Shown here: one piece after another, positions 3,940 through 64,000 of the stretch | How positions within the stretch are numbered: position 1 is the first letter of the stretch | Layout of the letters: every line of letters begins with the position of its first letter | Assembly: GCA_030704615.1 (NCBI GenBank) | Contig: CM060733.1 | Location: 62,806,001-62,870,000, forward strand | DNA: 64,000 nucleotides | Direction of reading: 5' to 3' | Origin: Takakia lepidozioides | Taxonomy: Eukaryota > Plantae > Bryophyta | Position numbers and translations under genes: made by a program | The notes under the pieces: generated by a model | The model's input: the letters and a program-made list of their open reading frames with translations, nothing else | Told to the model about the DNA's origin: nothing | Databases searched by the model: none

Positions 3940-4888
3940 TGTTAGAGGGCTGTCTGGGACTTAGACAGTTTTACGGGTTCTGTGGGGCACCCTTAATTTT
4001 GCGCAGACTTAGACCAACAGAGGCCTTAGGGGTGACAGACAGGCTTACACAGTCAGTCACAGCCTTACACAACCTATCACAGCCTATCACAATCTATCAC
4101 AGCCCGACACAGCCCGACACAGTCAACCACAGCCAAACACAGCCTCACACAGCTTCACACAGCCAGTCACAGCCCAATACAGCTTCACACAGCCAATCAC
4201 AGCTCGGCACAGTCACAGCCCGACACAGTTTGGCACAGCCCGTCACAACATTCACAGGGAACGATTACTATTGGCAGGGAACGACTATGTGGGAACGACA
4301 TCTGCAGAGGGAACGTGCATTCTGTCTTGAATGACAGTTTGTTAGTTAGGCGGCTAGAACAACTTGCGGGAAGAATAGGCAGAGTAGCAACAGGGAGGGG
4401 GACACTTCTTGGATCACGACTTGGTCATCGCGGGAAGGAAGCACGAACTTGAGCGCAAGGATGGAGAGCACGGTGAAGGAGGAGAGACGATCTGTTGATG
4501 CTTGATTCATGCAAGTTGTAGAGATGTACTGTAGAGAAGATTAGAGACACCATGACTACGGCCTGATACTTAAAAGACAATAATCTGATACATATTTGAT
4601 ACACTCACACTGTGTAGAGAGACCTGAGTGAAGCTGTGGAATGAATGGATGAGTGGATGGAACCTGGTAGATTGTTGAAGCAATCTGATACTTAATTATA
4701 GACAATAAGGTAACTTGCTAACATGAATGCGAGAAGGAATACAAATAGGAAGCACCCCCATGATACACTAGCTGTAGGTCATGACTGATTGTTCTGAGCG
4801 GGCTGAGTGCTTAGAGATTTCCAACTCTTCTATCTTGGAGTTCCCACCTCGGATAGCGAAGGGATAGGTGAGTAAAAGCCGCTCGACA
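3940..4888 (+). repeat. 5' LTR of Ty3/gypsy family A, copy 1 (~950 bp, TG...CA)
   Basis: Starts TGTTAGAGGGCTGTCTGGGACTTAGAC and ends AAAAGCCGCTCGACA; both termini match the reverse complement of 56118-57131; followed by a PBS. Confidence 0.9.
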
Positions 4889-4890
4889 TT

Positions 4891-4908
4891 TGGCGACCAT
4901 ACTGGGGA
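4891..4908 (+). promoter_or_regulatory. Primer binding site TGGCGACCATACTGGGGA (probably tRNA-Arg type)
   Basis: Starts with TGG 2 nt after the LTR end and resembles the TGGCGAC...CTGGGGA PBS of Tat/Ogre/Athila-like gypsy elements. The tRNA identity is inferred. Confidence 0.75.
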
Positions 4909-7900: not shown

Positions 7901-8719
7901 TGAATCTCGTGCAAGAGACTCCATTCAAGAAACAAGAACAAGAAATTAATAAAATTATGAGCAGAAGAGTAGGGGTCATTCCGGATAACCAATGTCTCGA
8001 CGGGAGGGGCAATCAAAGCTATAGCTTTGTAGCTATGGCGGATATCACGGACTATACACTAGCTCTACTTCTTACGCAGTGGCGCAATGATGGACAGGTT
8101 GAAAGTACTTTCTCTCTCACTCACTACTTGCAAGCCCCGCGGGCTTACACTCACTTGCCTATTCCATTCTGTGTCAACCATACTTTCATGCTTTACGCCT
8201 TACAAGCTTTCCTACAGCTATTCCAAACAAGGCCTTCTTGTTTGTCCGGGATGAAGAGAATTAGAGGGATGGAGGATCTCAGGGTGAAGAGCACGACGAT
8301 TCTACAGAAGCAGACAATCGCTACACCATAGGTAGTGCAGCTGCTGCAGGAGCTGCGATTGGAGGGGTTGCTACTCAAAGAGGGGTATTTGCAGGATTGG
8401 GTGTCTCAATTTTTGCGTAACAGGGCAGTTTCTGCAGTGACCTCCCTACATGGTTTTACAACAAAAAACCAATGGGAAAAATGTTCCAATGGATGCCGCA
8501 AAGGCTCTACAATGAGCATTCAAGAAGCCTAAATGGCCACATGGATAAATAACCAAGCCTCAAAGGCTACAAGTCCCAAAACCCAAGCCCACACCGGGGC
8601 AGCAGTCCACTAGTACTCCTACAATTGAAGAGCTCTATTTACAAATCACCATTGTGGCATATTTTCAACTACATTGCATCACATAGTCCCACCATTGACT
8701 GGGATCAGAAAAGTAATCA

Positions 8720-35043: not shown

Positions 35044-38000
35044 TTATTTGTGCTTGAAGTGTGGTTTCCGCTTTTCGATGAAGGCTTGCATGCCTTCTTT
35101 CTGGTCCTCTAGCCCAAAAGTGGCATAGAACAAGGACTGCTCTTTCTTAATACCCTCTTGCAAACCTATCTCATATGCGCTGTTTACAGCTTCTTTTGCT
35201 AGTGCCACTGCTGGTTGTGATAAATCTGCTATTTTTTTCCCCACCGAAATTGCCTCAGCTAACAATGCTTCATTGGATCCTGGAACCTGGACAGTACCCG
35301 TAAGTGCCAGTAAGTTTTCAACTTTCTGTAACCCTCCATCCCTGTCTTCAGAACACACTTGGGCATCTGCCAGTCAGTTGTGTCAACACTATGAACTCAG
35401 CACTTTCAGGTTGGTTTTCCACAATGGTACTCCGACTTGTCACACATCACTTAAATGCCGGAAACTTCAGAAGGACGACAAATGAAATGGAAAAGACGCT
35501 TACAACACGGCTGACCAGTCCTCTTTGTACTGCTTCTTCAGCATTCATGAAGTACTTCCCAGTGAGGATCATCTCCATTGCACGTGACTTGCCCACTTCT
35601 CGTATTAAACGTTGCGTTCCACCGATGCCTGGGATTGTACCCAAGCTCAGTTCTGGCTGCCCAAACAAGGCTTTCTCGCCTGCTAGCACTATGTCGCACA
35701 GCATCGCTAGCTCACAGCCACCTCCTAACGCATATCTGCACCAGAACCCTGGTACTTTTATCCAGTGGCCCTAGCATTGGACTTTAGTTAGTGCTGCCAT
35801 AAAATCTCAGATCACTTCAGCTGCCGGGGGGGAAGAAAGCCCCATAGAAGAATGGGACCCATTTGAAATAGATCAAATCATGCTTTCGTACGCACCAGAC
35901 AATCAACCCTACTAAAGGGAAACTCAAAACATATTTGTTAAAAATGGTATCATGACTCGACTCACTAGATTTGCATGGCCTCTGTGCATGAGAGAGAACA
36001 AGATGAAGAAAGAGAGCTTTACTCCTGCAGACCAGCTTGTTTCTCATGCACACTGCAATTGGCTCGAATAAAGGAGAAATCACCCATTTACAGCTGCAAT
36101 GATGGGTTTGCGAATTGCATGGACAGCATTCCAACGATAAACAAAGCGCGATGTACACGCATCCACAAAGCTCTTATCCTTCATTTCCTTTATGTCTGCT
36201 CCAGCTGCAAATGCCTTGTCTTTTCCTGTCATCACTATAGCCCCTACCTGTCCCATCCAGCCAATCATTAGATGCTGTCCACTGGAACTGCAGCTGATTT
36301 TCCTGCAGTAAGAGCCACTATTGATCATGGTAATGCACATCGCTTCCAACTGCTTAGAATTCTGGGGCTCTTGTGTGTGAACAGTGTTGCAGACTCTCAA
36401 GGGTAAATCTTTTCACTCTTACAGAAGTCTCTTCAGAAAAGGTTTCAATGTAGGGAATGTCTACAGACTCTCCATTTGCCTCCAACATGTCTGGACATTG
36501 TACTGCCATAGATGCAGCCCAAGAGAACCAGTTTTGACTGGGAAGTAGGAGCTTCGCCATGAAGTTCTCTGCAAAGGTACCTGTGATCATAAGTCATTGT
36601 GTAAAGGGCCCCTCTGAGCAAGTGATACAATGATAGAGGCTACAAAATCTTCAACTCAAATGAATTTCCATCATGGTGAATTGCTGGTATATGAGGATTC
36701 CTTGCACTTGGGAAATGCAGCTTTGTAACTGAGCCATCTTCTGACCTCTTACCTGGACGTCTGATTAACAGGTTTCAAAACCATTTACCTGAAGTGTCAC
36801 TATTTTTTCATTCATGGGGAGAAATGTGGTCTTAACTTTGTTGCAAATTAAGCACATTGTGCAAACCAGAAAGTTTTAACCCTCCAGTTGCCCACTTATT
36901 GCACATTTAGCCAGGCGGATGGGGAGCAGATGCTCCCTACCTGCGGTGCTGCATCAAAGGTTTGGAGGGCATCCACCACCTCAGTCATAAGAGCCTCAGA
37001 GAGAGCATTCAACGCTTTGGGACGGTCCAGTATCACCAATCCGACGGCCTCTTCCACCAACTGGGCTCGGATGCATTTATAGCTCTTTCCTTCCAGAGGG
37101 GTCCCTTGCATTTCCCCCTCTGCTATGTGCATACCTGCAGAGTCCATCTCTCGATTATGGCATCTGAAGGAGTGAATCAATCGTGCAAACTCTGTCCTCA
37201 TGCCAGTTGAAACTCCAGATATTCTGGTGTGGTAGAAAGCTGATTGCAAGTTGGACAGAATCCCTACAGTTTCTGACTGTGATTGAGCTCTTCCATTCCC
37301 CCTAAAACCCAACTGATATCCTGGCATTTTGCACTTATCTGATCTGCTGGATTCAGAAGGTGGTAGCCCTGCAGCAGCCCACATAGATTTCTGTCTCAAA
37401 TTTTGCTTCATTTTATTGAGCACCATGAATTAGGATGTGGAATGGAAAGCTATTCAGCTTGGTACTTTCTACACCAGGCACTCTCTTAATGGACAATTCA
37501 ATATATTGGAGAAAACAAGCTTGAGCAAGCCTATGAAATTATGAGTACATTTTGGCGCCAAACTTTCTTGTTCTGGAATTTCGATCACCTCAATGTGGAT
37601 AAAGCGTTTTCAGGACCAAATCAAAGTCACCAGAATCCAAATTAATACGATAAGCCTAAGAAAATAATGATCAGATGATCCAACCATAAATCATCATTGC
37701 TCATAGTTTAGCACTGAGCCGCATAGCCACATACTATCACCAGAACAAAACCCACACGCTCTCCCACCGCTCACCGTTCCAAGTCAATCACAGGGCCTTC
37801 CAAGAATTGAATCTATTACCACATTGTTGAAGGATAGCCGGAGCACCATGGCTTGAGCCAACTAGATACTTTGTTTTCTACCCTACCCGACCCATGAAAA
37901 AGTAACAAAGGAACACTCAGAGAAGCTGGATAAATTCTACTCAGACATGCAAGAGATGAACTTGGAAACACGTGCAGGAACTCCTTCTAGCGTACAGACA

Positions 38001-38653: not shown

Positions 38654-41600
38654 ATGGCCACTGGGCTTTCTTGTCTGAGAGCGTTAATCTCTGTTGGACG
38701 AGCACGGGGGATAGCCCAACATCGGTCTTCACTGTCTTTCAGCTCTGTGTGGGATAGCCGACGAGGTGCTGTCCTACAATTTCAGTTGAGCAAAGGTTTA
38801 CAACTAACCATCTTCTGGTCACTGCACTTTGGATTTCAAGGTTTGATGTCGGGTTTTCTCTGGTTAACGTATGTCTTGCATTCTGAAATTCTCTTGTGCT
38901 TGTCTCCTTTGAGAACCTAGGGCATTTCAATAATTTGGCTACGTGATAAGAGAGGGCAATTTCCTCTCGTAATTTGGGTTTTGCAGTCGTTGTGTTTGGA
39001 AAGCTGATATACAAGATTCGCATACCTCGGAAATGGCGAGAATCTTTTTTTCGTTTCCGCTTATAATTGCTACGACTCAAATTGACCTCTCTCATACCGG
39101 AGGTTAAAGCAAAAAAATTCTGCTACCCTTCCTCGATCTTTTTGTCAAATGCTGCACTACTCATTCATTCAACTTCCTGCATTGGTGTACACAGACAAAC
39201 ATAGAGGAATAAGATAGAGTCGGTGCAGAACGTTTTTATGTTGCAGCATTGTAACCAGTGCTACCATAGGAGCAAGTGATGAGTTTTTCATCAGCCACAA
39301 TTTGTGCAGGAGTCTGTAAGGCGACAGTAGTTGCCCCCGATCTGTCTATGGAAGGCCCAAAGGCTTCTAAGAGATAATAAATGAAAGAAATGGAAACTGC
39401 AAGAGAGATTGTACTCATAAGACGTTGTTTGCCGTAGCCTTGTGGCTATTGACCCCGCGCCCAGTTTGAGCGGGAACAAAAGGGACAGAACCTACCTCTG
39501 TCAGGGGCTGACGTTGGTAGTGTGACTTACCATCATATATAGAATTAATCCGGGTTTTCCAGATATCCTCTAGAAATCCCTTCACACAAGCATCAATCTG
39601 CGGTGTGTGATTTGCCCAAAAACTAGGTCTCAGGAGGGCCTGGGCTTTTGGCTCAGCTTCGAGACTTTCAAAGTTGTTAAACAGGGGTACAGGCACAATT
39701 CCCTTGATAGAATTGAAGAGAGCGTCTCTTTGGTGAGAGAACCCCGGACAGTGTATCAGAAAGTGAATACTGTCTTCAGATTGCCCACAGAGCGGGCAAT
39801 TGCACTCTCCCTTTCCTCTCTGCTTCTGTTTGCTGTTCAAAGGTAGGCTTCCTGCCCTGAGTTTAAATTTCAGTCTAGTGCCGAAAGTGGGTAGACCCTT
39901 GAGGTCATCCAAGATGTCCTCCCCCATGTCACTGACTGGAAACAAGTTCAGGGAAGTTTTCTGCCTAACTTCATTTTCATCAGACAATCTCATGGCAACA
40001 GACATGGCTGAGGACACTACAGCCTCTAAGTCAGATTTATCCAGCAGGGTCAAGACTTGCGGATCCAGGTCCAGGTCCTTGAGAATCTCTTCTACTCTCT
40101 TCTGCCAGGACTTAGCCTGTTTGACAGGGCGGTCCTGTTTCCAAGATATAGATTCGATTAACTTAGGATATCTGGTGTTGGGCATATGTTGCAGCTGACC
40201 CCACCATCTGACCTTGAATTCATCTCGTCGGGAGCTTAAGGACGGAATGCCAAACTCACCCCGAACAGCCACATTGGCTGTTTTGGAGCATGCTGACATA
40301 CACTCCTTAAGCACCCCCACTTGAATGGATTCTAGAGACTTAGCCTGGTTGGAGTTATCAACCCATATAGCAGATCCGTACTCCAAGGCAGGTCTAATAA
40401 CGCGACAAAGCATGGTTTTCTTAACCTCAGAGTTGACCCCTCTGCAGTGGAAAAATTTAGTGAGCCCCAGAGCTTTGCCCTTGCCAGTTTGAACAACTTT
40501 CCGGATATGTGCATCCCAATTACAATTGGAGGAGAACTCAACGCCCAGGTAAGTGTAGGAAGGGAGGACCGGGATCTCTTGGCTACCCCACTGCCACTTA
40601 AGATCACTTCCTCCCTCTCCTCTGTCGTTGAATGCTACCACTGCACATTTGCTGACATTAGCCTCTAGCCCCCAAAGATCAAAGTATCTCTTCGCGCAAT
40701 CAATCAACTCCTGGAGATTGGTTGGAGTCTCCCCTATGCCTGCGAAGTCATCCGCAAACATAAGGGCTGGTATGGTGGTATCACCCACCCTTAACCCAAA
40801 TCCCTCACTTTCCACATCCTCGAGGAGTTGATTGATGAAAACATTGAAGAGCAGAGGGGAGAGAGTACATCCTTGAGCTACACCTTGGTCTATGTCAAAG
40901 AAGTTGGACTTCTGTCCGTTAACAGTGACACAGCTTTTGGTGCGAGCATACAAGTTGTGGACAACTCTCCACATCTTTCCCTTGATCCCACAAGACCAGA
41001 GGCGGAACCATAGGCCATCTCTCCACACTGTGTCATGAGCCTTTTTGACATCCAGGAAAAAGACATAAGTGGGTTTCCCTTCTTTTTTCCTTCCCTGGAT
41101 AATCTGGCTTAGAGTGAAGATATGATCCACACAGCCCCTGTTTCGCCGAAAGCCAGCTTGGCCTTCGTGGAAACAACCTCTAGACTCCAGATCAACCTCG
41201 AGACGAGTACTTATAACTCTGCAGAATGTCTTGCCAACAGCATTGAGGAGCGTGATGCCATGGTAGTTCCCCGGTTCTTTGTCACCCTTCTTGTATAGAT
41301 TGACAATGACCCCCTGTCGCCAGCGAAAGGGGATCATTTCAGTCTTCCAGATGAGGTTAAAGAGGAGAACTAGGGCCTCTATCATGGGATCGCCACCGTG
41401 CTTGATAAGCTCGTTGACAATACCATCAGGTCCACCAGCTTTATATCCATTTAAATGTTCAATTGCTTCCACAATCTCAGAAGGACTAATGGGAGCATTA
41501 TAAGCCATTGAAATATACTCCAGTTCATCAGGGCTGTTTTGAATTATAGGAACAGTTTCCCTCCATTCAGCAGAAGACCCCTCACTGTTAGACCTAGAAG

Positions 41601-44600
41601 TTGCTGCAAGAGAGAGAGAGAGAGAGAGAGAGAGCTTTATGAGATATGGCGGCGAAGGACTAGAGTGAACCCCTAACAGGGTAGTGGTGAATGCATTAGG
41701 GAAATGGGTGCTTGGAAAAAGATGGGATGGAGATACGTGCTGTCAACGCATACAAGTGCTGGCCTTGTCAACAAGCACCCTTGAGTCCAACCAAGTAGGA
41801 CTCTCATACCTTGATTCCAGTGCTTGTGCTTGTGGCTTCATATAGTTGGGAGTGTTTGATTCCACACAAGCCCTTGTGGTCCTTTTGGCCCCACTCAAAG
41901 ATAGTTACAATTTCCTTTAAGAAATAATGAGCTTCTAACATTTGTGGTTCAAACATGAATTTTTGGGCCTTTCAAACCACTGGCTCATATATTATTCTCT
42001 CAAGGGTTGTTTTAGGGTGCTCCTTAAACAGGGTTCTCATTTTTTCAAATTCTTATGCTCCTCAACTGCCTAACTTACTTGGTAGGTTGCCTTCATGTCA
42101 ACGAATGCAATAGTATTGTCAGGATAAAAGCAGCATGTACTGAAACTGGTCCAGAGCAGATCACATGGTTTAGGTGAATGAGAGGAATCCATTTCTTTAT
42201 GTGTTTGAACTTTTCTGAAAGCACATTGTCAAGGCGCATTCGATGTTGTGCAGCAGGCAATCTTCTATGCAGATGCAGGCATCAATCGTGCTGCAGAGAT
42301 GCGGGGAGATGCCACAAGACTGTCCCACGCCTTCAGCAGCCCTGAAGCTCTTGTGAGCCTCATTTTGCCATCTGAGTACTACCTAAAGTATTTCCACTGC
42401 ATGTACTCATAAGACTTTGTTTGCTGTAGCCGTGGTATTTCCACAGAGAGAAAAAGAAAGATGCCTTCTGGTTATATGTTGGTCTTGCATGCATGCGTTC
42501 TTGTCACAGCCATCTGTGTGCATGACAGGTGACTTCACAGATGGGTACTTCTGCGCTGGATTACATTTAGGGTCTATGAGAGTGGTAGTTTTCACTTGTG
42601 CAGGCAACACCAGCCCTGACTTAGCTCGGCGTGTGCAAACACACAACTCTGTATAGAGAGTTGTGTTTCTTGGATGAAAGCTCTGGAATGGGTTCTAGGA
42701 GCATACATTTTTGGTTGTAAAGTTGATAATCTTCAAGAGCGGCCAAGGAGCACGTGTCCCTTATTTTTGCCCTCTTTTGTCATTGTATGTGCCTTCTCCA
42801 TCTTAGACTAGCCAGAGTCCAGGTATGTTCATCAGAGTCGGGGATGACAATAGCGCATTGGTGCATCAGGTGGTACCTCTCTTGGGAAGCAAAAGCTTGA
42901 TAAAAGGTGGCAAGCCTGTCCTCATTCCAGCATCGACACTACCAAGAAAGGAGGAGGATGAACCAAGTGCTGGCGACCCCATCTTTCTTGGCTTAACCAA
43001 CTCCAATCAAGTGCCTGTGTTTGCTGTTAATGTGAAGGACCTCTGCAGGTGTGCCTCTTATTATTTTGATCAGCACTAGCTATCTCATGAGACTAGTGTG
43101 CCCAGTGATGAGAGTAGAGATTCTGCCCTTATAGCAAGCATGGGAAGTGAGAATGTGTGGGGTCAGCCACAAACCTGCATTGGGAAAACCTGAAAGAAGC
43201 ATCAAATCAGTGAGTGTTGTCATTTTTGAGGTGATAACATGAGTAACACATTTAAATGTATGTGTATAGAGTGATGACAGTAGTGAGATGAGAGAAGGGA
43301 GCTGAATTGGGGGCTTGAGGAAACAATGGGAATGCAAGCTAAGGCAGGGAAGCTGTAGCAGTACAGATGGAAAAAGACAGGCATGGGAGCAAGATACGGA
43401 GTGGGTGGATGTGCGGAGATATGGCCCCCAGCTGCAGGCATCAGAGGCAGGGCTTCTGGCATATGCTAGGGGCATGGTTGAGTGGCAATCTCGCAATGTA
43501 ACACCCTGCTCCTTAATGTCATACAATTAGATGTTTGCATCTTCCCTGGCTATTATCTTGGCAGCTTCCAAAAGCCTCAACCACAAATGTGGAATCTGCT
43601 TCCCATTTGCGATAATCTGGTTTGTGGTCGAGTGTCAATTTTGGCATTAGGTACTCGTCTGCGCCATTTGATTCTTTCATTCGGAGCATTTTGAAGTACA
43701 ACTCAGAATATTATTAAGCTCAAGTGTTCACTGCACCTAAATGTTCTGTAGATCAGATCACATGCATCCCATTCCAGCAATACCTAGAGAGAGAGATGAT
43801 GCCAGCCGAAGCCAGCAAAAATAAGAATATTACCTATATATTATACTTCCCACTGGAGGATTGATTACAATTACTTTAGATATCATATAACTCGTATTCT
43901 GATCAATATCCCACTAAAAATTGACAAATATGAAGAAGTACTAGATGTCGACTCAAAACGTTTCAATAAGTGGGGCCTATGCTTGTGCAGTGCTTGGCAC
44001 AGGCAAAGATAGAGGAAACGGAGTTTGGGGTGGCGGTTTTGACTACTTTGTGGGAGGTTATTAGGTGCAAAGCATTCTTCTACTGGTCAATGAGGGCAAA
44101 CTGCAATGATTGGTGGTCAGTGAAAGTGTGCATGCATCACTTAGTCTTACTTGCAAAGATAAAGCAGGGTTGTCCTGGCTGAATCCTGATAGGCCTGTGC
44201 CTGTGTTTGGGGTTTTGAGCAGAAATATTGCGGGCACTGTGGCATGAGAATGGTTGCACGAGATGGGGGACATTCTTTAAATTGCTCATCTCCATCATGT
44301 GGGACTGCTGCCTATCCACGCTTGGTATGCTGAGGTGCCTCTGTCAATCATACATCCATTAGATTTGCTTCTTTGTTGTCCTACTTTGTCGTCTCCTGCT
44401 TTTCATATATGCCTTCCTCGTTTCTTTTGGCAGCTCCATTTGCATAGTTGAATGATGATAAGGTGCAAATATCAGCAATTGATGGAGTCTTTGTTCACAG
44501 GATCCAGCTGTCATAATGCTTGTCACCTCTGGCAATTATGTTCTCCTTGGCAGACAAGTAAGCAGTCTTTGCAGTATTTGGTTGTATCTGGGTCATTGGA

Positions 44601-47600
44601 AGAGTTTTTTCTCTTGGAACACATTTGTGAAGGTTACTAGTGAAAGCACTGTCTTTACTAAACCGGTTTGCATTGGGGTCTCTACTCCACTCCATGTCAG
44701 TGTTCATGGAACAAAATTGTCTCGCTATGGACGACAAATGAAAGCCATCACTGTAGGGGGCTATAGTGCCAGTTCTCCCAGCACTTTTGATGCCTGGTTC
44801 TCACTTATGCCTGAAGTGCAGAAAGTAACAATGTAGCACCCCTTATACCTACCAGGCCTATTGATCAACAAATTACTGTATTGAAACTGTCATATTTTCT
44901 GCAGGGGAAATGGGAACCTGGGCGGTATTCATTGCTGGCGGGCTTTGTAGAGATTGGAGAGACATTTGAAATGGCTGTTGTGCGGGAGGTCAAAGAGGAG
45001 TCTGGAATCAACGTGGACCTGACTAGCATAAGGTGCTTGTCATGTTATTCTATGTATTTCAGTACCTCATCTCTTTCCTCCTTTCCTTGGCAAGGACTCT
45101 CTCTACTTGTTCCAGCTGTCCCTGCAAGTTATAAAGTTCTTTCTTTGTTGTTCTACTTGTGTCCTTTGGGCCCTGTGGACTTCATGCAGATGTATTAACT
45201 TTCTGGCTGTCTGTCTTTCTTGTCTCTCTTCCCCATAGATTAGTAGAACAGTAACTCACAAGTTGTTGGTTGATCAGGATGGATAAAGTTCCTTCGTTGT
45301 CACAATCTATGTAATGTGACCCTCCCATCTTTTAATCCTCGACCAGAGGTCATCCTCAGTGGCAGCTTGCCAACTCTCTGAATATACAAGGAGACTTTAC
45401 CCATCATTGGGGAAAATCTTATAACCTTCCTACCCCTCTGGGAAGTACTCCACATCCCTCATGACTGTCCTATGTGGAAGTAGATCACCTGTTCCTCATA
45501 CTATGAAGTCCAAGGCAGATGCTGTTGTCTCTGACTCCCAGTCTTCGACAGAAGCCTTCAACTTGGAGGGCCAGCACTTTACATGTATGCCTTAGTCCAT
45601 CTTCAGGCAATGCTTGGTGTGTTATGATGTGGGTTTCTTGGTGTTTCACTTTGTCACATGGACCCTCAGCCCCTTGGACTTCCGAGTTGACAAGTAGACT
45701 TACCATTGACTTTTCATGTGACGTTGCTGTATTGTGTAGCTATGCAGCTAGCCAGCCGTGGCCCTTTCCATCATCACTTATGGTGGGCTTCACCGCTACT
45801 GCAGTGAGGAATCCAAGTGAATCTTATCTCGCAATAGCTGAGCGTTGTGACATCATTGCTGTTGGTTTTGAGAAACTGGCTGTGGTTAATGAGGTCAACT
45901 CGTTGCCAAGGGCAGCAGCTGACTGTAAGGAACTAGAGGTACACTGCTGGCTGGTCATCCTTCTCATATTGAGGAGGTTCATTGTTGATTGTCATTTTTA
46001 GGATTGTGCAAGGAGGGTAACTTCCTACTTTCACCTTACAGTATCTAAGATGTCATCTACAGTGAGTTGACCCAGCTGTGGGCACCTGCATTAACTTTCT
46101 GCTGTCCTGTTGAGACGGGGTGTCAGACCAGGGTTAGGCAGAGAATGACAAGCTTGAGTGCAATGGAGCCATCTGCACTTCTTTATTGGGGCAGTGAATG
46201 GAGAAGCAGGACTGTTGAGAATGACTGCTGCGTGGTGGCCTGGATGGTTGGCATGCAGGACGCAAGGTGGATACATAAGGACTTGTTACGTTGGGTGCTT
46301 TCAGGGAAACCCTTGCCACATGGTGTTGCACTCAATGTACCGGGCAAATATGCAATTGCTCACATTCTGATGGAGCAGTGGATTTCCAGTAGCATAGAAG
46401 CTCCATGGGCTGGGGATGCTGTAGCAACTGTTGAGATTGATCATGGTAAGGCTCCTGTGAGAAATCCAGTTTTCTCTCTCTTTGTATATTGATATGGCAT
46501 GTTGCCTTCCTCCAGTATGACTGGGAGTGCAAACACAGCTAAATGACACCACAATGTCATGTCTTCCTCTCTTTCCTCTCGCAGTGGGACTGGCAATGCG
46601 AAAATTGCCACAACTGGTATGCAGATGCTACCTCGTCAGCTCCAGAATCAAGATCATACTTTCCTTTATGATGTCCAGTTCTTAAATCAACAGTCAAATC
46701 CCTCTATGTGGGAGCACTGTAACAGCAGTCATGGCTGATGCCATACACTTGTGGTTAAAAACCCACATTTGGCTTTTGGAGGATTAGTCTCCTATGGAAT
46801 AATAGTCTTAAGGTTATCTTGCAAGTAAGTTCAAAGGTACACAATCAAAACATGATCCGTTCATACTTAATAAAAATGTACAATCATTTACTCCATCTGT
46901 TAAATCAGAGTTGCATTCTCCTTTTGAGTGAAGCCCTAAAAGCTCAGTAGCATGCCGACGGGTGTTCTAGAGGGCAGTGTCCAAAGCTATGGTGTTTGCC
47001 AGTGTCAGCACTTCTCATTCTTTTTGGATATACAGATCACATGTTGTGACAGCTTCCTTGGGTGACCTTTCAAGGATCCAAATTTCAGTGTTCCTATGGT
47101 GCATTGAGGCAGCAAAAGACTAATCTAGATATTTTGGGATGCATGAGGGACAGGGGTTTTCAAGTATGTCCTCATCTGTTTGAAGGACAGTTCCGGTCAT
47201 GAAAAACTGGTGAGTTTCTACGGAAGATAATGCATTTAGAATAGGAAAAGATAGGGATCCACATTTCTCTGCAATTACATCTCCACTAGGTTGTGAATTA
47301 ATGTCCACTGACCAGTAACTTGAATGTCTGTGTGTAGTTGGTGAGGGGAGATGCACGATTAGGATATCACTCTGACATCTTGGAGGCGACTCACAAGCAA
47401 GTTCAAGACCTGGGGCTTCAGGTAGGAGGTTCTTCATATCACATTCTGTCTCTGGTAGAGTGTTCTCATTTTTCCTAGCAAGTGGGATCAAAGATTGACC
47501 CTGGTATAAGGTCTGGTCTAAGTCAAGGTGGTCTAATGTCTCTTTCAAGAAATTCAATGATCATACTACGTCGTTGAGAGTAATTTGATCTCTCAGAGGG

Positions 47601-47783
47601 TGGGTTTTTGAAGTACAGGTGGAGGTATTGGGGGGAGGCAGGATTGAACATGATTCTGAGCAGCTCAAGCTTCATGTCTTCAGCATATCACAAGCATATG
47701 GGCAAGCTGACCACACAGTTACTTGTTCCCTCCTTCGTCAATGGTTTCCTTTCCACGGCATCACTTTGTCTTGGGAAGGTTAA
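38654..47783 (+). CDS. NudC-type NAD(P)H pyrophosphatase (NUDIX) fused to a C-terminal Janus/Ocnus (PHPT1-like) phosphohistidine phosphatase. Exons ~38654-38765 (uncertain, a linking exon may be missing), 42257-42352, 42870-43048, 43359-43497, 44223-44324, 44501-44557, 44905-45032, 45740-45938, 46259-46445, 47154-47209, 47338-47421, 47619-47783
   Basis: Zn ribbon KYCGHCG..C....[13 protein letters not shown]; Nudix box [23 protein letters not shown]; [14 protein letters not shown]; ELEDARW; PGKYAIAH; then VEIDHG|VFKYVLI..KL|LVRG.....YHSDI..|[30 protein letters not shown]. All junctions from 42352 onward are GT-AG and in phase. Confidence 0.88.
39409..41603 (-). mobile_element. 5'-truncated non-LTR retrotransposon (RT plus C-terminal CCHC) in the first intron of the NUDIX gene, with a 12-bp TSD
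   Basis: Uninterrupted 697-aa ORF 39415-41508 with [51 protein letters not shown]...HFLIHC; CTGCAAGAGAGA at 39397-39408 and 41604-41615. Confidence 0.93.
41609..41634. repeat. (AG)n microsatellite at the LINE insertion site
   Basis: About 13 AG units read directly. Confidence 0.95.
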
Positions 47784-48863
47784 TGGAAGACGGCTACATA
47801 GGGTCAGGAGACTGAGGTAGGATTATTTCCTTAGCCATAAGTGATTGACCGCATGCATTAGATGCAAAGAATAGCCTTGGGGCTGATCGTATTTCAAGAA
47901 ACTCCAGCTCAGGGCGAGCTGGTACAGTGCAATGGTTTTGGCGGGCATTAAGGCTACTGCAGTCTGGACTTCTACGGACCTCGCCTACAAGTGTATCTAC
48001 ACAAAAGGGCACTACCGCTTTCATGAATAAAAGGCAGCAGTTGAAGCTCCATGAGCTTGGGGACGACATGGCTTTAGTGAGTGCACACCCTCTAACTCGA
48101 AGCTCTGAAGAAGACCACTGTTATTAGTACAACGGAGGGCTTACTGATGTAATCTGATTCCTCAATTGCAGCCCCCTCTACTCAGTACAAAATGCCAAGA
48201 ATTTTGGAACCATATGCACAGATGCCATTACGAATGCTTCTGTGACAATTCAACAATCAGGTCTGTCTGCACTCTACATAATGAAGTAAGACTGGGTTCT
48301 AGCCCTCTTCATGGGGCTGTTAGTGAGACATCCAGAGTGTCCAATGAGTCACAAGGTACAGATGTTGGACTTTAAAGGGAGAGAGATTCAAAGGGAGAGA
48401 GGTCATGTCTGAGTCAAGGACGAATTTCAACACAAAAACTCACTATGAAAACAGAACACCAAGGTTTGCCAGCAACCAGGGACTAGTGAGAACAGCGATC
48501 GTGGAGCACACGAAATTACAAACCAACATCTCCCCAGGTAGATCTAGCAGCGGTTCATATGCATGGGAATGGCGGCTCAACTGGAGGCTGGGACGGTGCA
48601 CATCAGCACATGCGTCGAAAGCCTCGGGAAGGCTACGTCGACATCTTATCTGCGTGGCAAGATTTATGCGGAAAGTGCGAGTCCGTGGACATTAAGATGC
48701 CGTCTGGGTGTTCAGGCTCCACGGCACGGTCTCACGTACTAAAAATGTACGAGTAGCAATACATACTGTGAGGAGTTCAACACCGACGAGTACAGATCTG
48801 ACGGAGAGGGGGTAGTTCTTAATTCTGCTGGGAGCTTCATTCGAATTTCTTGAGAGTACAGCT

Positions 48864-51800
48864 ATGGCAGGCAAGCGAATTTTGATAGTGAGTACGTCGC
48901 ATGAGAAGCTCGGAACCACCGACCAGCCCACTGGCGTATGGTGAGAAACTCTCCCACCCCACCTCCTTCTCGTCTGAGAGGGTTGACGTTTCATCGAACC
49001 GCTCTACCGCAGGCACGGCAACTGTAGAAGAATCTAGACAATGTTCGACTATCGGTGCTAGATTGCTAAGTCGGTGTTCGCTATGGCAGGGCTGAAGAGC
49101 TGGTAGCGCCCTACTACAAATTCAAAGAGGCAGGAGCAAATGTAATTGTGGGCAGCATCAAAGGTGGCCGCATTCCTATCGGTAAGCCGCCTAGTTTGAT
49201 GTCACGCTACAGGACGCATTCCACGAAGAATGCGGTATGTCTTTAAGGGGATTTCCTTAGGTTGGCATCTCTGTCGTGGTTGAATCGATCAGTCATCCTA
49301 TTTGTGCAGTAGGTTGGGAGTGTTTACTCATATCACACAATTCAATAGGGACATGCATTGGGAATTTACTGAAGATAGTGATGTAGAGAGATGATAGCAA
49401 CCGTAAGTAGAAAAATAAAGAGCCTCTAGCGGGTTGTAGCGGGTGACTTGTTGCAAATTTTGAAAATACCATGTCTCTTCTTGGAAATGCCTCACCTCAA
49501 AAGAAAGAGAGGTACGATTGTGTAATTCGTGGGTCAATAATCGTGTGGTGTGATGTTTTGTGATTGCAGATCCTGTCAGCTTAGCAGGTGGGGCTGTCAC
49601 AGAGCATGTGAAGCTCTACCAACAAGATGGTTAGTCTGGCCGTTCTTCTCTGCGGACTCCGCAACCTTGAAGGAGGAACTTAGAATTTAGGTTGCCTATC
49701 ACTGGGTGGACTTGGTGATAGTGCCTGTGTGAACATGTCTACATTTTTACATCTGCATGATGCCTATGAGAGGAAGTGCATAAAGTCAAAAGTTGCACAG
49801 TAAATGAGTTGCAATTGACATTGCACTCAGCATTGTGGTCATAGCGTAGCAGTTTAACTCTCCAGACAGCCATTGAGTTCTACATTTCTGCTAACAATAT
49901 AGGTCGTTGATTAAGGGTGGTTATTGACACTATAAGCTTGGTATGTTGGCTGGAGCAGAGGAGTTGAAGAAACTGGTGGAGAATTCTATCTCTGTGAAGG
50001 ATGCAGGCAAAAACTATGATGCTATTTTTCTGCCAGGTAGGGCAATCTGCATATGTAATCCCCACCACCCCTTTCCTCTTCTAATGATGCAGATCTTTCA
50101 CGTGTACGACATTCACATTGAACCTGACATTGTCCCCTGGATGAGCAAAGACTGATGGTGCATTTAACTGATTTCACCTCAGTGGTCAGGCCTGTCTGCG
50201 CAAATGTCACCACCATACAGGTTTGATCTTAGCTGGTGTACTGGTATGACCTTTTTCTTTTTACACATAGAGAGGGATTGCACGAGAGAGGTGTTTACTG
50301 ACCTTCCAAAACTGAAGCCTTCACAGTAGCTGGACTGCGTTGTCATTCCATGCTGGCGGAGAGGGAGAGGGAGATTATGTACTCATAAGACGTTGTTTGC
50401 CGCAGTCTTGTGGCTATTGACCCCGCGCGGTGGCATCCTGTATCTCCCATGGACTTATATAGGCCTGCATGTATGGGGGATCTAATCTTTCTCCCCCAAA
50501 ACCATTAAAACAAAGAAAAACAAAGGGCAAATGTATTCAATGCAGTCGAGCGTCCTGTACAGACTCTCAAAGATTGAAAAGACACAGAGAGGGTGCCTAG
50601 TTTCAATAGAGCATTCACATTTGAATATAATGTTGGTGTGCGTGCGACTTGCACCTCACCTTTTGTCTGGTCCAAAGAATTGTGCAATGGGAAGAAAGCA
50701 CCTCTAGACTTTCTAGCAGCTTTTTAAGATGATGCAGTAGGTGTGTCTGTCACTTTGTCTCCCTCTCTTCTCCTTTTCCCCTGGTTTCCCTTTACTTAGA
50801 TCTGTGTCTCTTGTCTGTCTCCCTCTCCCCTGGTTTCCCTTCAGGCCTCCCAGAGTTAAGAAAATTTGTCTTCTTTCCTTCCCTCACACATACACACTCA
50901 TGGATATCCACTTATCCCCAGTTAATCAAGTGCTGGGGCTTGCAGGTGGGCATGGAATAGTCTATGATGCTCCAAACAATCCTGATCTAATTGCAGTGGC
51001 TGAGAAGTTATGGGCAGAAGGGAAGATTGTGTCAGCAGTGTGCCACGGGCCTGCAGGATTCGTAGGCGTTTGTACACCTGATGGAAAATCAATGGTGGAT
51101 GGGAAAAAGGTATGGTACATTATTTGCAACACCACAGCTTATTCCAATTCAACACTGGAAGATGGGTGATGCTAATTTCAAGTATTAGCATCACCTGAGA
51201 ATGTGAATTTAAGTTGGGATGGATGAAAGATAGTTGGATATATCTAAGTAACATAATGCTCAGATTGTTTTCACTCTTTGGCTTGCAGGTGACAGGGTTT
51301 TCCAACTCCGAAGAGGAGGCTGTAGGCAAGACAAAAATCGTACCCTTTCTTTTGGAGGATAAATTGAAGGAGGTGGGTGGTTTATACGAAAGTGGCCCAG
51401 ACTGGGTATGTGTACATCCCAGTTAGGACTGTATGCTACGTAATCTGTATGTACATTGGTTCATTATTTTTTCTGTGGAAGGTATTAAATAAATTGTTGT
51501 AGGTGAAAATGACTTTAGTTGACAACGGCTCAGTGGTTTACAGCGAACGGATGCATTTGCAAGGTAAACATCTATACACTTGCCGGGATAATGCCAGCAA
51601 AAACTTTGGGATTGTCCACGGACACTTTGTCGAAATTAAGGATGTGAAAACCTGAAAACGTGTGTTTTCTTATTGCCAATTATACAATGGAGAAAATTTA
51701 CCATGTTTTATCTGCTGTCCGCAGCTGCTTTTAGTATCTTGCATGCTTTGATACTGATGAGAATTTTTCCTGGGGTTGGTGGAAACTATTACAGCAACCG

Positions 51801-59417: not shown

Positions 59418-62400
59418 ATGCCCATCTCCATTGCATTCGTAGCAAATAATGCTCAGTGTCTCTTCTTTGATTTGCACAGAAATATAAGCACCATCCAGAG
59501 TTGGCAATTTCAGCTGCCCATCTCCCCTGCCTGGCAGATGTCGAGTTTTGGCTAGCTGGCACCCCCTAGGGAAACTCTTACCCCACCTCTTCTTCCTCTT
59601 TGATAGGAACCCGCTTTCTGATGCATATCTCTACAATTTTGTTTCCTGGTTAGGACTTTTGTGGCTGATTCAAGAGGCGGCATCGCAATCTTAATCTCTC
59701 CGAATCTAGTCAATCAAATTTTTAGCATGGATATCTGGATGACTGGAAGAGCTCAATTTGGCATTATCTCCATTCCTAGTTCTGGATGCAAAATATGACT
59801 TATCAATGTTTATGCTCCAAACGCCATTAATGACAGAATAGCTTCTGGAGGATGGCTTTGCAATCCAAAATTTGAGTTGACCACACAAAGATTAACAAAT
59901 GGATTTTGGTAGGTGATTTCAATATGACTGACAGGGCTCTGGACAGGTTGGAACCTGGCACTTCCTGCCTCACCTCTGAAGAGCTAAATGCATGGGAATC
60001 TCTCTGCCTCTCTGTAGGTTTTATTGACATCTCCACTCCAGGAGATAACGAGCTTAGATTCTCTTGGTCAAATTGTAGAGCTCCACCGGATCTAGTCATG
60101 GCTAGATTAGACCGGATATACTGCACCAGTGGCATCTTGTCTTGGGCCCAGCCAGCCCCTTTAGGTCCGGTGCTCGCAAATTTTGATCATGCAGAGATTA
60201 AAGCTCTTTTCACTGTCCCCGGGTCCAAGCTCAGAGGTAGAGGTTACTTCAAGCTAAATTCTTCATTGCTCAAATCTAAGTCAGCGGTTAAAGAACTGGC
60301 CCAGGTATGGTCCACATCTGGGAATCAGTTCCAATCCGCCACCCTTAGATTTCTTACTAAACTTGAAGCAACGCGGCTTAGATCTCTGGAGCTCTCTAAA
60401 GCTTTTGTTGTGGCCAGCTCTCAAAAAGAAAAGAGCCTGTTCAAATGCCTCCATCTATGCCAGCAGCTCCTAGAGAACAAAGATGAAGGTCCTTGCACCT
60501 TAATGAATTATAATACAGCCAAGTCAAACCTATGGAGCTTTAGGCAGCAGAAAGAAAATGCTATCAGGATTAAGGCTGAAGTGAACTGGTCACTGAATGG
60601 GGAAAAAATGACAAAATACTTCTTTGCTAAAGCTAAACAAAGGCAGATGGCCTCGACCATTGCCTCTCTCTCCTCCCCTGATGGGACTACTTCCTCAGCC
60701 CCAAAGGTGATGGCCTCCATAGTAGAAAAGCACTTTGCATCTCTGTTCTCATAAAGGTCCAGCTCTGCTGAAACAAGACTGGCCTCAGAAGAGATCTTGC
60801 AACACATCCCCTCTCTTCTGTCACAAAAGGAAAAAGAAGATCTATCCTCCCCGCTTTCCAGTGAAGACCTGTCTGAGGCTCTACACTCCCTCCAATCTGG
60901 GAAAATGCCAGGCCTAGATGGCATGCCTGTTGAACTGTTCAAGGCCCTGTGGCAGACTATAGGAGGTGACTTTGTTGAGTTGGTTAAAGACATACATTTG
61001 AAGGGAATTATGCCCTCACAGCTTTCTATAGGTCTCATCACTCTGATCTTCAAAACATGGGACAGAAGCTTGATATCTAATTATCGCCCCATCACTCTCT
61101 TGAACTCGGCCTACAAAATTATTGCCAAGGCCCTGACATTCAGGCTGCAGCCCATCCTCTCCAGAGTTATTAGGCCGGAGCAGTCTGGTTTCTTGACAGG
61201 GAGAATGATTCTTGATAACATCCTTCTAATCAATGAGGTCATGCATAAGGCTAAGTGCTCAGAGCAACCCCCGGCTTTGTTAATGCTTGATTTTGAAAAA
61301 GCTTTTGACAATATTGACTGGGGATTTCTGAATCAAGTCCTCAACAAAATAGGGATGCCACAAGGCTTTAACAGGTGGGTTAATCTCCTGCTCACTTCGG
61401 CATCCAGTAAAGTCACTATGAATGGTGCCATCTCCAAATCCTTCGCTCTCTACAGATCTGTAAGACAAGGATGCCCTCTATCCCCATACCTGTTTCTCAT
61501 AGCGGCTAATGCTCTGGGCCACTACTTTGCGGCAAGGCACGACATTGCAGGCCTAAAAACAGATGATGGAGCCTCAATCAAGGTCTCTATGTATGCAGAT
61601 GACACTACATTGTTTCTCAACAATGAAGACCCAGCCAACATAATGCGCGCCAGAGAAGCCCAGCAATTTTTTTGCAAAGCCTCGGGTCTCAAAATAAATT
61701 GGAACAAGTCGGTTGGTCTGCTTACGGAGCTGCTTGCTACCTCCCGCCTTCAGCACGGACCTAGATGGGGACAGGAAATAGGACTCAAGTGGCTCCAGCC
61801 GGGTTCGGCACATACGCTGTTGGGATTTCAAATTGGAATAGGGCTAACTGACGATCAGCGTTACGAACCCATCTTACAAAGGCTTCGTAACAAGCTGGCA
61901 TTCTGGAGCTCGGCGATGCTGTCAATTGCAGGTAGAGCCTTGGTCCTGAATCAGATCCTGCTTGCATCCATTTGGTATCCGGCCTCAGTCTGGTCCCCAG
62001 GCTCCATGCTCATTGCAAAAATCAAGACCATGATGAGGAATTTTCTATGGGGTGCCTTCCCTCAACACCCCTCGAAGTGAGCCCTAGTCTCATGGGCTCA
62101 GCTCTGTAGGCCTCGCAAAGAAGGAGGGCTGGGCTTGCTGGATCCACCTCTGCAAATTACGGCATTACTTGCAAAATGGATCCCTAGGTCGCTCACCAAT
62201 GAAGGCAGCCCTTGGTGTAACTTAGTTCAAGAACACCAAGTTCGATCCTTCCCAGCAAATTCCACAGCATGGGCACCATGTCTCAAGTGGATGATGCATG
62301 GTCATGGGAAGTCGAAAAAGATAGGCTCTGCAGCTTGGATCTCTATATGGGATGCCTGGAGAATAATGCGGCCTCATCTTACCCAGAGAAGAGCCAAATG

Positions 62401-64000
62401 CTTTGAGGAGGCTGTCAGGCAACCCCTGTTTGGCAATCTCAACCTGGATTATGGCCCTTTGGCCTTTCTTCACAAACAATGGGCTACCTGGGAGGCAAAA
62501 GGACTCTCTCATATTGCCAATGTCTGGGAAAATGGTCAGTTTATCCAATCCGGCCTCTTGTCCTCTCTAATTTCGGCCAGATCCATTGCTTGTGCTTGGG
62601 ATCATATTATAAGAGGGGTACAATACGTTCAGCCCTTGCTAGTAGGGGATCCATGCACAGCCAGCGAATTGCCAGTATGGTTTGGATGCTCTCAAGGAAA
62701 CCGCCGGCTTGCCCTCTTGGCCACCTCCACCTCTGCTAACCATTGGGAAGGGCTTCTCTTCCAGGCTGGGGATGGTGGGCATTTGACCCTTCTAGGCACA
62801 GGAGAAATGCATCATGATCTAGCTTACCGGATACGGGTCTTTGAAACGTCCTCTGGATCCACAGAACCCAGCCCGCCCTTTGATGCGCAGATCTGCTGGG
62901 CTCAGAAACTATCATTTGTTTGGTTCCTGTCCTTTCCTCTAAGTAGGCTGCAGCTTGACCTTGGAGAATGGTCATGGATGGATGGCAAGAAAACGCCATT
63001 GCTTAGATACAAATTCAAGACAGGTTACAAAATGCTTCTCGGGCAAAACAGCCAAGTGGAATGGCAAATGGAATCTTGACTTGCAAATCCCTGGTTGGAA
63101 CTCTATATGGAAGAATATCTGGGCCAAGCACCGTCTGGCCAAGATCAGTGTTTTTTTGTGGAAATTGGCAAACAGGATTCTCCCAGTGGCAGCCTGCTTC
63201 CCTGAGCAGGATACTACATGCCTTGCCTGTAACATAAATTTGGAAGAATCAGTAGAGCATGTTTTTACAGAATGCAATACTGCTGTTAGAACCTGGCAGT
63301 TGGTGATAAGGTTCTATCTAAACTGGAAAGCAGTGCCACATACCGATGCTTCTTTACTGATGCTTAATCTACGTAATGGCTCGATCCGGAACTCCTACCC
63401 AATTTGGGCATGCCTAAGGGCACACACTCTATGGGCACTGTGGAAGGCTAGATGCAGCCAAGTCTTTGAAGGAAGACATCCAAGCATCAGATTCATTCTG
63501 TTTAAGTTGTACTCTGAGCTGTTGACTGAGGGGAAAAAGGCATGGGTGTCACTGGTTGCTGCAACAGGCAGGTGCAGCGAAAGGAGGAGTCGTTAACTTC
63601 TCGCGGATTTCGACATCACCTTGGGCAAAGATGACCTCATGTGCACAAGGCTCGATGAATCGAGAGTCCAATGGCACAATGATATCCCCCGGGCATGGCA
63701 AATCGCCGGTTGAATCGGATGGTCTTGATGTCAATTGGAAACATCTCAATCCATGGGCTGCAAAGTCCAACGCCCACGTGGATTTTGGGGTGTGAGCTAT
63801 CACTGCTCTGATGCTGCAGGATTTTTATGTGCCAAACTCCGTATATGATGCAGCACTAGACCACTTCATCTCTTCACTTCTACATCACTGATATTTCCTC
63901 TCTTTGCTAGACAGCCTAGACTCCCACTGTTCCCCCCCCTCTCTCATAATGCAGGGTGCTTCCCCTTGTGATACGCCTCTATGGCCCCATCGGAGGTCAT
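59418..64000 (+). mobile_element. L1/Tx1-like LINE ORF2 (APE endonuclease, RT, zf-RVT) with stops/frameshifts, plus 3' UTR running off the window; 58140-59417 is probably the ORF1 C-terminal region
   Basis: GGIAILIS, NVYAPN, WILVGDFN, RLDRIY, xDH; PGLDG, NYRPITLLN, LDFEKAFD, RQGCPLSP, YADD; GGLGL; FLWKL..C..C...ESVEHVFTEC. Confidence 0.93.

What the first reader, a model, noticed from the sequence alone, without database searches (positions are those of the whole stretch)
46259..47783. NudC-type NUDIX hydrolase fused in frame to a PHPT1/Janus phosphohistidine phosphatase domain
Seen in sequence: the last NUDIX exon ends ..[14 protein letters not shown] at a phase-1 donor (GTAAG, 46446). A phase-1 acceptor at 47153 (branch-like GACTAAT upstream) continues (G)[18 protein letters not shown]. 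Exon 47338-47421 gives [28 protein letters not shown]. Exon 47619-47783 gives [54 protein letters not shown]-stop. None of these exons is in the ORF track. Established knowledge: [12 protein letters not shown] / VRG.....YH.DI / LGGGRI.H / S.AYG.A.H are the signature blocks of the 14-kDa phosphohistidine phosphatase family. Equivalents of human K21, R45, catalytic H53, R78, S94 and H102 are all present. SQPWPFP marks the NADH-pyrophosphatase/deNADding subfamily (NudC, Npy1, NUDT12, AtNUDX19). The first PHPT1 motif sits inside the NUDIX exon with no separate start, so this looks like a real fusion rather than two adjacent genes. Inference: one polypeptide may couple NAD(P)H or NAD-cap turnover to P-N (pHis, pLys, phosphoramidate) hydrolysis, possibly in an organelle. 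I do not recall a characterised NudC-PHPT1 fusion or a characterised plant PHPT1, but novelty is unverified.
Basis: partly seen in the sequence, partly recalled or inferred. Interest (0 to 1): 0.92.

Follow-up and report, generated by a model that had tools for sequence, protein, structure and literature searches.

The report
Moss NADH pyrophosphatase–phosphohistidine phosphatase fusion
This is a real, spliced moss gene that joins an NAD(P)H-cutting enzyme to a domain like the animal phosphohistidine phosphatase; the same fusion runs from green algae to conifers and was noted in a 2016 paper, but I found no test of what it does.

Summary
Contigs from two independent runs (probably RNA) show ten GT..AG junctions, including the fusion junction 46445/47154, and one 1,946-nt contig spans both halves. 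Eleven introns match Ceratodon and Sphagnum orthologues in position and phase. The NudC catalytic and NAD-binding residues and the PHPT1 residues K21, H53, R78, S94 and H102 are intact, and both halves are under similar purifying selection.

The architecture is not new. It occurs in chlorophytes, charophytes, bryophytes, lycophytes, ferns and gymnosperms, with no angiosperm hit. Maruta et al. 2016 (PMC5118724) described it as SQPWP-Nudix 'subgroup II' with an Ocnus domain, a paralogue of AtNUDX19. They did not assay it or link it to PHPT1, and I found no later study.

Best reading: an organelle-targeted (probably mitochondrial) NAD(P)H pyrophosphatase carrying a His53-type phosphoamidase domain, apparently the main PHPT1-type domain in green plants. 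Coupling between the two domains is untested. Searches were run exon by exon; the joined model was not searched. Verdict: new member of a known, uncharacterised subfamily.

The parts
38654..38795 (+). Inferred coding exon 1: ATG plus a Ser/Arg-rich, acid-poor transit-peptide-like N-terminus. Donor not resolved (candidates 38766, 38796, 38841 phase 1; 38869 phase 2).
   Evidence: Sequence and composition; orthologues have a phase-1 first intron after aa 39/52. Not covered by the read lay.
39409..41603 (-). 5'-truncated LINE-type element in the inferred intron 1 (RT ORF 39415-41508), flanked by a 12-bp direct repeat, possibly a target-site duplication
   Evidence: RVT_1 1.5e-31; repeat 39397-39408 / 41604-41615
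41685..41794 (+). Exon 2 (rest of presequence); 3' end supported by RNA contigs, 5' end 41685 or 41680 inferred
   Evidence: Loose ends before 42254 in both runs match 41765-41794
42254..42352 (+). Exon 3, start of the NudC N-terminal domain
42870..43048 (+). Exon 4, NUDIX-like domain
43362..43497 (+). Exon 5, NUDIX-like domain
   Evidence: (1.7e-05)
44223..44324 (+). Exon 6, zinc ribbon with four Cys; equivalent of NudC Y124 at 44313
44501..44557 (+). Exon 7, start of the Nudix core (DPAVI motif, NudC I132 equivalent)
44905..45032 (+). Exon 8, complete Nudix box; E174/E177/E178 equivalents at 44986, 44995, 44998; F160 at 44944
   Evidence: (2.5e-09)
45740..45938 (+). Exon 9, SQPWPFPxS motif, a green-lineage insert, and the conserved Glu before the DARW motif
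46259..46445 (+). Exon 10: last Nudix helix, linker of about 17 aa and first PHPT1 strand (VEID); the domain boundary lies inside this exon
47154..47209 (+). Exon 11, Ocnus/PHPT1; K21 equivalent at 47162, Y22 at 47165
47338..47421 (+). Exon 12, Ocnus/PHPT1; R45 equivalent at 47344, catalytic H53 equivalent at 47368
47619..47783 (+). Exon 13 coding part, Ocnus/PHPT1; R78 at 47640, S94 at 47688, A96 at 47694, H102 at 47712; stop TAA; no PTS1 (ends WEG)
   Evidence: (1e-12)
47784..48199 (+). 3' UTR, at least to 48199; AATAAA at 48026

Best explanation
The gene is the moss orthologue of the green-plant SQPWP 'subgroup II' Nudix protein. An N-terminal presequence imports it into an organelle, most likely the mitochondrion (inferred). 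The NudC/NUDT12/NUDT13-type module, a Zn-containing homodimer by homology, cuts the pyrophosphate of NADH/NADPH to give NMNH plus AMP or 2',5'-ADP; it may also cut NAD- or dpCoA-capped RNA (inferred from intact residues). The tethered PHPT1 domain keeps the His53/Ser94/Lys21/Arg78 pocket and most likely hydrolyses P-N phosphoamidates by the animal general-base mechanism. Candidate substrates are organellar pHis proteins such as succinyl-CoA ligase alpha or NDP kinase, and stray pHis/pLys. The two active sites probably work side by side as a shared nucleotide and phosphate clean-up enzyme rather than by channelling. Shown: gene, splicing, frame, orthology, residue conservation, selection, fold of an orthologue. 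Inferred: both activities, location, substrates.
For: Splicing and one contig across both halves. Introns identical to Ceratodon and Sphagnum. In the chlorophyte Micractinium the Nudix tail, linker and first PHPT1 motif lie in one tblastn segment of 100% identity, i.e. one exon. NudC residues shown essential in PMC5034116 are present; E174, E177, E178, W194, S199, M201 and I132 are invariant in 36/36 homologues. Moss orthologues pass the NCBIfam NAD(+) diphosphatase cutoff (190 and 186 vs 158). PHPT1 H53, S94, H102 and Y22 are invariant in 36/36; mechanism in PMC11277029 and PMC4817053. The model of the Ceratodon orthologue matches NUDT12/NudC (E about 1e-26) and PHPT1 (TM by target 0.91, rmsd 0.9 A). 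dN/dS vs Sphagnum is 0.18 (Nudix) and 0.21 (Ocnus). N-termini of 13 orthologues are basic and acid-poor; TargetP gave mitochondrion 0.61-0.95 for all five Ocnus-bearing members. Mouse NUDT13 is a precedent for a mitochondrial NAD(P)H pyrophosphatase.
Against: No assay of any family member was found. K21 is Glu in Physcomitrium, R78 is Trp in Sphagnum and Psilotum, and R45 is Trp in three algal sequences, so phosphatase chemistry may be weakened in some lineages. WoLF PSORT preferred the chloroplast for three of five members. Side-by-side action does not explain well why the fusion was kept across the whole green lineage with a linker of 16-19 aa in land plants. Exon 1 is inferred only.
Confidence: 0.5

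Rival explanations
1. Coupled two-step breakdown of a small molecule: the Nudix domain cuts a dinucleotide (NAD(P)H, a damaged form, or an N-linked nucleotide adduct on His/Lys) and the PHPT1-fold domain removes the phosphate left behind (from NMNH, 2',5'-ADP, or the resulting pHis/pLys).
For: The fusion is retained in both green divisions with both domains under equal constraint. Short green-clade Ocnus ORFs are mostly cut-off fusions, so the domain rarely stands alone there. A HIT-NudC fusion (HIT proteins hydrolyse P-N bonds, own knowledge) is listed once in PMC6856373.
Against: No P-N hydrolase neighbours among the closest bacterial nudC loci: no true HIT-type ORF in 80 loci, two RH-motif ORFs only. 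Animal PHPT1 substrates on record are proteins. The linker varies from 16 to 38 aa in algae.
Confidence: 0.22
2. The Ocnus domain is a non-catalytic or weakly catalytic phosphate/pHis sensor or docking module that regulates or positions the Nudix enzyme, as ankyrin repeats do in NUDT12.
For: Independent losses of K21, R78 or R45 in several lineages while the phosphate-binding H53/S94 core is kept. NudC-type enzymes often carry accessory domains.
Against: This protein and most homologues keep the whole catalytic set (K21 34/36, R78 32/36, H53 36/36).
Confidence: 0.18
3. The main job of the Nudix half is removing NAD or dpCoA caps from organellar RNA, with PHPT1 acting on proteins of the same compartment.
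For: Four Zn-Cys and all NAD-RNA decapping residues of E. coli NudC are present.
Against: The Zn ribbon is degenerate in most chlorophyte members, so a lineage-wide RNA role that depends on it is doubtful. No direct data.
Confidence: 0.08
4. Artefact: two adjacent genes joined by read-through or misprediction.
For: One X1 contig (46425-46779, depth 5.6) runs into intron 10, which would give a Nudix-only product. An in-frame Met lies 25 codons before the PHPT1 start. The runs are only guessed to be RNA.
Against: The spliced junction is in both runs. The domain boundary lies inside an exon. The same architecture and introns occur in other mosses, and some fifty fused proteins occur across green plants. 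The Met is not conserved.
Confidence: 0.02

Closest known systems
SQPWP Nudix subgroup II (Maruta et al. 2016, PMC5118724): Pp3c14_12120, kfl00032_0450, Cre13.g582476, Vocar.0001s0115
   Same: [quoted passage not shown] The Physcomitrium protein in my hits (533 aa isoform; cluster mate ends AWG) fits the table row for Pp3c14_12120.
   Different: Nothing structural. The paper gave no assay and did not connect Ocnus to PHPT1. It said 'lost in higher plants'; my hits show it persists in lycophytes, ferns and gymnosperms, so the loss looks angiosperm-specific.
AtNUDX19 (SQPWP subgroup I)
   Same: NUDIX-like + Zn ribbon + NUDIX with the SQPWPFPxS motif; NADPH pyrophosphatase.
   Different: Paralogous subgroup; no Ocnus domain; chloroplast plus peroxisome with PTS1. 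Mosses have both subgroups. No AtNUDX19 sequence could be fetched for a direct tree.
E. coli NudC, mammalian NUDT12 and NUDT13
   Same: Nudix box, Zn motif, NAD-binding residues and fold. NUDT13 is a mitochondrial NAD(P)H pyrophosphatase.
   Different: No C-terminal phosphatase domain; NUDT12 has N-terminal ankyrins and is peroxisomal. The moss Nudix half scores higher against environmental, mostly proteobacterial NudC (167-215 bits) than against NUDT12 (132) or E. coli NudC (98).
Human PHPT1 / Drosophila Janus-Ocnus (PF05005)
   Same: Fold (rmsd 0.9 A for the orthologue model) and residues K21, Y22, R45, Y52, H53, R78, S94, A96, H102.
   Different: Stand-alone 14-kDa protein in animals; here fused and probably organellar. 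E51, Y93 and M95 of the peptide-binding rim differ (G, I, Q), which hints at other substrates. Green domains fall on their own side of a supported branch.

Membership tests
SQPWP subgroup II Nudix-Ocnus (Maruta 2016) | NUDIX-like + Zn ribbon + NUDIX + C-terminal Ocnus in one frame | tested here: met
   (exon by exon plus phase arithmetic)
SQPWP subgroup II Nudix-Ocnus (Maruta 2016) | Orthology with moss members | tested here: met
   11 introns in the same position and phase, exon lengths equal or within 3 nt, vs Ceratodon and Sphagnum; best tblastn scores with mosses
SQPWP subgroup II Nudix-Ocnus (Maruta 2016) | Placement apart from subgroup I (AtNUDX19) in a tree | not tested
   No subgroup I sequence was returned by any tool; relied on the paper's tree and table
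NudC / NADH pyrophosphatase (NADD) subfamily | Nudix box GX5EX7REUXEEXGU with catalytic Glu | tested here: met
   exon 8
NudC / NADH pyrophosphatase (NADD) subfamily | SQPWPFPxS motif plus Y124, I132, F160, M201 equivalents | tested here: met
NudC / NADH pyrophosphatase (NADD) subfamily | Four-Cys zinc ribbon | tested here: met
   exon 6 translation and Pfam 1.1e-05
NudC / NADH pyrophosphatase (NADD) subfamily | NAD(P)H hydrolysis and homodimer | not testable with these tools
   needs an assay
PHPT1 / Janus-Ocnus | Ocnus HMM and PHPT1 fold | tested here: met
   fold tested on the Ceratodon orthologue
PHPT1 / Janus-Ocnus | Active-site K21, H53, R78, S94, A96 (and H102) | tested here: met
   mapped through Ceratodon to human PHPT1; A54 is Ser, a backbone contact
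PHPT1 / Janus-Ocnus | Phosphohistidine phosphatase activity | not testable with these tools
   needs an assay
PHPT1 / Janus-Ocnus | Stand-alone 14-kDa protein | tested here: not met
   fused; filed as a PHPT1-type domain, not as PHPT1 itself
AtNUDX19 orthologue (subgroup I) | No Ocnus domain; C-terminal PTS1 | tested here: not met
   has Ocnus, ends WEG

The most novel reading that the evidence does not exclude
The two domains form one pathway: an organellar repair enzyme in which the Nudix half cleaves NAD(P)H-derived or N-linked nucleotide adducts and the PHPT1 half removes the remaining phosphate. This would be the first plant His/Lys phosphoamidase I know of, link pyridine-nucleotide turnover to phosphohistidine control, point to an ancestral non-signalling role for PHPT1, and mark a function lost only in flowering plants.
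Probability: 0.2. Interest if true: 0.75.

Novelty: new member of a known kind. Interest (0 to 1): 0.35.

Why it matters
The architecture is on record, so the gene itself is no discovery. What remains of value is that I found no characterised phosphohistidine phosphatase from a plant in the library searched, and this fusion seems to be the main place where green plants keep a PHPT1-type domain. It is conserved with an intact active site from chlorophytes to conifers and was apparently dropped in angiosperms. Named orthologues exist in tractable models (Marchantia MARPO_0019s0154, Physcomitrium Pp3c14_12120, Chlamydomonas Cre13.g582476), so organellar pHis turnover and the natural substrate of the PHPT1 fold can be tested directly.

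Tried and rejected
- Two separate genes or read-through: rejected.
- Lineage-specific novelty: rejected.
- A bacterial source of the fusion: no Ocnus relative confirmed in the genome-contig scan of 185,579 species (pattern-seeded, so not exhaustive).
- A HIT or SixA neighbour of the nearest bacterial nudC as a hint of coupling: not found. Three of four annotated loci sit in a dnaX-recR / pheA-kdsB housekeeping context.
- An alphaproteobacterial (mitochondrial) donor: green sequences form one group (support 99) but do not nest in any bacterial clade, and no other eukaryote rows were available. Unresolved.
- Functional Nudix-only isoforms: the Welwitschia and Diphasiastrum short forms stop at intron 9, before the last Nudix helix, so they are not evidence.
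- Stand-alone green PHPT1: the short hits are mostly fragments carrying the Nudix tail or linker. One unnamed 132-aa eukaryote protein (P0356) could not be traced.
- A flagellar or sperm role as for Drosophila Ocnus: unlikely, since the fusion is kept in Zygnematophyceae and conifers, which lack flagella (own knowledge).
- Literature searches by gene id and keywords found only the 2016 paper.
- Organism identity: not confirmed (blank).
- The joined protein was never built, searched or folded; the natural Ceratodon orthologue stood in for it.
Full report
Observation. Exon 46259-46445 carries the last Nudix helix, a short linker and the first PHPT1 strand, and ends at a phase-1 GT at 46446. The next exon starts at 47154, and the frame stays open to the TAA at 47781-47783. 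Two public runs from two studies hold about 30% of the region's words, close to the exonic share. Laid on 42200-48199 they show ten GT..AG joints, each in both runs, including the fusion junction. One X1 contig of 1,946 nt runs from upstream of 42254 to 48087. The tool only guesses that these runs are RNA, but intron-free contigs with a 3' UTR and a single differing letter are best read as mRNA.

Whole gene. Exons 3-13 are 42254-42352, 42870-43048, 43362-43497, 44223-44324, 44501-44557, 44905-45032, 45740-45938, 46259-46445, 47154-47209, 47338-47421 and 47619-47783. The loose 5' ends match 41765-41794, the end of exon 2. No in-frame ATG lies next to exon 2. The best start is the ATG at 38654, which begins a Ser/Arg-rich, acid-poor stretch. 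That places a 2.2-kb LINE-type RT element (RVT_1 1.5e-31; 12-bp flanking repeat) in intron 1. Exon 1 and its donor are inferred. The model gives about 547 aa. Pfam on single exons gives NUDIX-like, Zn ribbon, NUDIX and Ocnus in that order, and the last exon matches human PHPT1.

Relatives. An unindexed search with the last exon returned many 380-810 aa proteins with the match at the C-terminus; 19 of the 20 long ones scanned carry NUDIX plus Ocnus. Named carriers: Cryptomeria, Taxus, Welwitschia; Psilotum, Pteridium, Adiantum, Ceratopteris; Selaginella; Sphagnum, Ceratodon, Physcomitrium; Marchantia, Riccia, Calypogeia; Mesotaenium, Spirogloea, Closterium, Chlorokybus, Mesostigma; Myrmecia, Micractinium, Chlamydomonas, Volvox and a pedinophyte. 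No angiosperm appears among the fusions or among short Ocnus proteins sought with a gymnosperm-led profile. These lists are capped at 120 and word-seeded, so absence is likely but not proven. The window scores best with mosses (Ceratodon 756, Sphagnum 719 bits). All 11 introns from exon 2 on match both mosses in position and phase, with exon lengths equal or within 3 nt. In Micractinium the domain boundary and the FKY motif lie in one uninterrupted segment. Both domains give trees that broadly follow plant phylogeny, with green sequences on one side of a supported branch. One origin before the chlorophyte-streptophyte split is the simplest reading. Most short green-type Ocnus ORFs still carry the Nudix tail or linker and are fragments.

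Residues and fold. Mapped through Ceratodon to E. coli NudC (roles from PMC5034116), the window keeps E174, E177, E178, Y124, I132, F160, Q192, W194, S199, M201 and four Zn cysteines. The Glu I label E219 rests on the NUDT12 alignment and my own knowledge. Moss orthologues pass the NCBIfam NAD(+) diphosphatase cutoff. Mapped to human PHPT1 (roles from PMC4817053 and PMC11277029), it keeps K21, Y22, R45, Y52, H53, R78, S94, A96 and H102. H53, S94, H102 and Y22 are invariant in 36 homologues, whereas K21 is Glu in Physcomitrium, R78 is Trp in Sphagnum and Psilotum, and R45 is Trp in three algal sequences. The Ocnus half is as constrained as the Nudix half (dN/dS 0.21 vs 0.18 against Sphagnum; mean column conservation 0.61). 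An AlphaFold model of the Ceratodon orthologue has a disordered 73-aa N-terminus and two confident modules that match NUDT12/NudC and PHPT1 (rmsd 0.9 A).

Mechanism. Shown: one transcript, one frame, two intact catalytic constellations, deep conservation. Inferred: import into an organelle (basic, acid-poor N-termini in 13 orthologues; published TargetP calls mitochondrion for all five Ocnus-bearing members while WoLF PSORT often says chloroplast); NAD(P)H pyrophosphatase activity (about 0.85), with mouse NUDT13 as a mitochondrial precedent; His53-dependent phosphatase activity (about 0.65). I put 0.5 on side-by-side action with P-N protein substrates. Animal PHPT1 acts on ATP-citrate lyase, and succinyl-CoA ligase alpha and NDP kinases are known pHis proteins, which gives organellar candidates. 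Coupled removal of the phosphate left by the Nudix cut gets 0.22, a sensor or docking role 0.18, organellar RNA decapping as the main role 0.08, and artefact 0.02. A search for a parallel P-N hydrolase beside the nearest bacterial nudC genes gave no support for coupling, and no bacterial Ocnus was found.

Comparison with what is known. Maruta et al. 2016 (PMC5118724) split plant SQPWP Nudix enzymes into subgroup I (AtNUDX19; chloroplast and peroxisome) and subgroup II, and wrote that all subgroup II enzymes except those of Micromonas have an additional Ocnus domain and that higher plants lack them. Their table lists Physcomitrella Pp3c14_12120 (533 aa) and Klebsormidium, Coccomyxa, Chlamydomonas and Volvox members. 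This gene is a member of that subgroup. The paper linked Ocnus only to Drosophila testis proteins and did no assay. It is the only paper in the library with both 'nudix' and 'ocnus' or with any of the gene ids searched; subscription journals are mostly not covered. New here are the RNA support in this species, the extension to lycophytes, ferns and gymnosperms, and the explicit PHPT1 active-site mapping. The scan's own notes held nothing on this gene.

Verdict. Real gene, correct observation, known architecture, untested function. Novelty: new member of a known kind. Interest 0.35, carried by the open and easily tested question of what a PHPT1-type domain does in plant organelles.

Noticed in passing
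window 39409-41603 (-): 5'-truncated LINE-type element with an open 697-aa RT ORF ending in a Cys/His motif, inside the inferred first intron, with a 12-bp flanking direct repeat. The gene is still expressed and spliced.
   Followed up: partly
window 46425-46779: Contig in run X1 only (depth 5.6 vs 11.9 spliced) runs into intron 10. If it is an isoform it would encode a complete Nudix fold without the Ocnus domain; AATAAA at 46869. Other scattered intronic contigs suggest pre-mRNA or DNA instead.
   Followed up: partly
window 36896-37426 (-): Exon of an enoyl-CoA hydratase family gene (ECH_1 1.9e-06), head-to-head with the fusion gene.
   Followed up: partly
window 49091-51414 (+): Exons of a DJ-1/PfpI (Hsp31/glyoxalase III-like) gene just downstream (Pfam 0.003 on one exon). 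These neighbours are not seen beside the Ceratodon or Sphagnum orthologues.
   Followed up: partly
window 42401-42431: A 30-nt intronic stretch attracts deep contigs with loose ends in both runs, probably a dispersed repeat.
   Followed up: no
window 46235-46258, 47130-47153, 47595-47618: Several used acceptors have G-rich upstream sequence rather than a polypyrimidine tract.
   Followed up: no
P0333, P0153, P0001 (homologues): Substitutions in PHPT1 anchoring residues: K21E in Physcomitrium, R78W in Sphagnum and Psilotum; the Zn ribbon is degenerate in most chlorophyte members.
   Followed up: partly
The Nudix half scores higher with environmental, mostly alphaproteobacterial NudC than with NUDT12 or E. 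coli NudC; a donor could not be resolved.
   Followed up: partly
distribution: Algae-to-gymnosperm presence with apparent angiosperm loss resembles that of flavodiiron proteins and dark protochlorophyllide reductase (own knowledge); a lead only.
   Followed up: no
whole genome: Closest to mosses; 5,084 windows of 64 kb would be about 325 Mb, which from memory fits Takakia lepidozioides. Not verified.
   Followed up: partly
window 4868-7903, 21269-29330, 59906-63596: Ty3/gypsy-like gag-pol ORFs and an L1-like endonuclease-RT element, judged from ORF translations.
   Followed up: no
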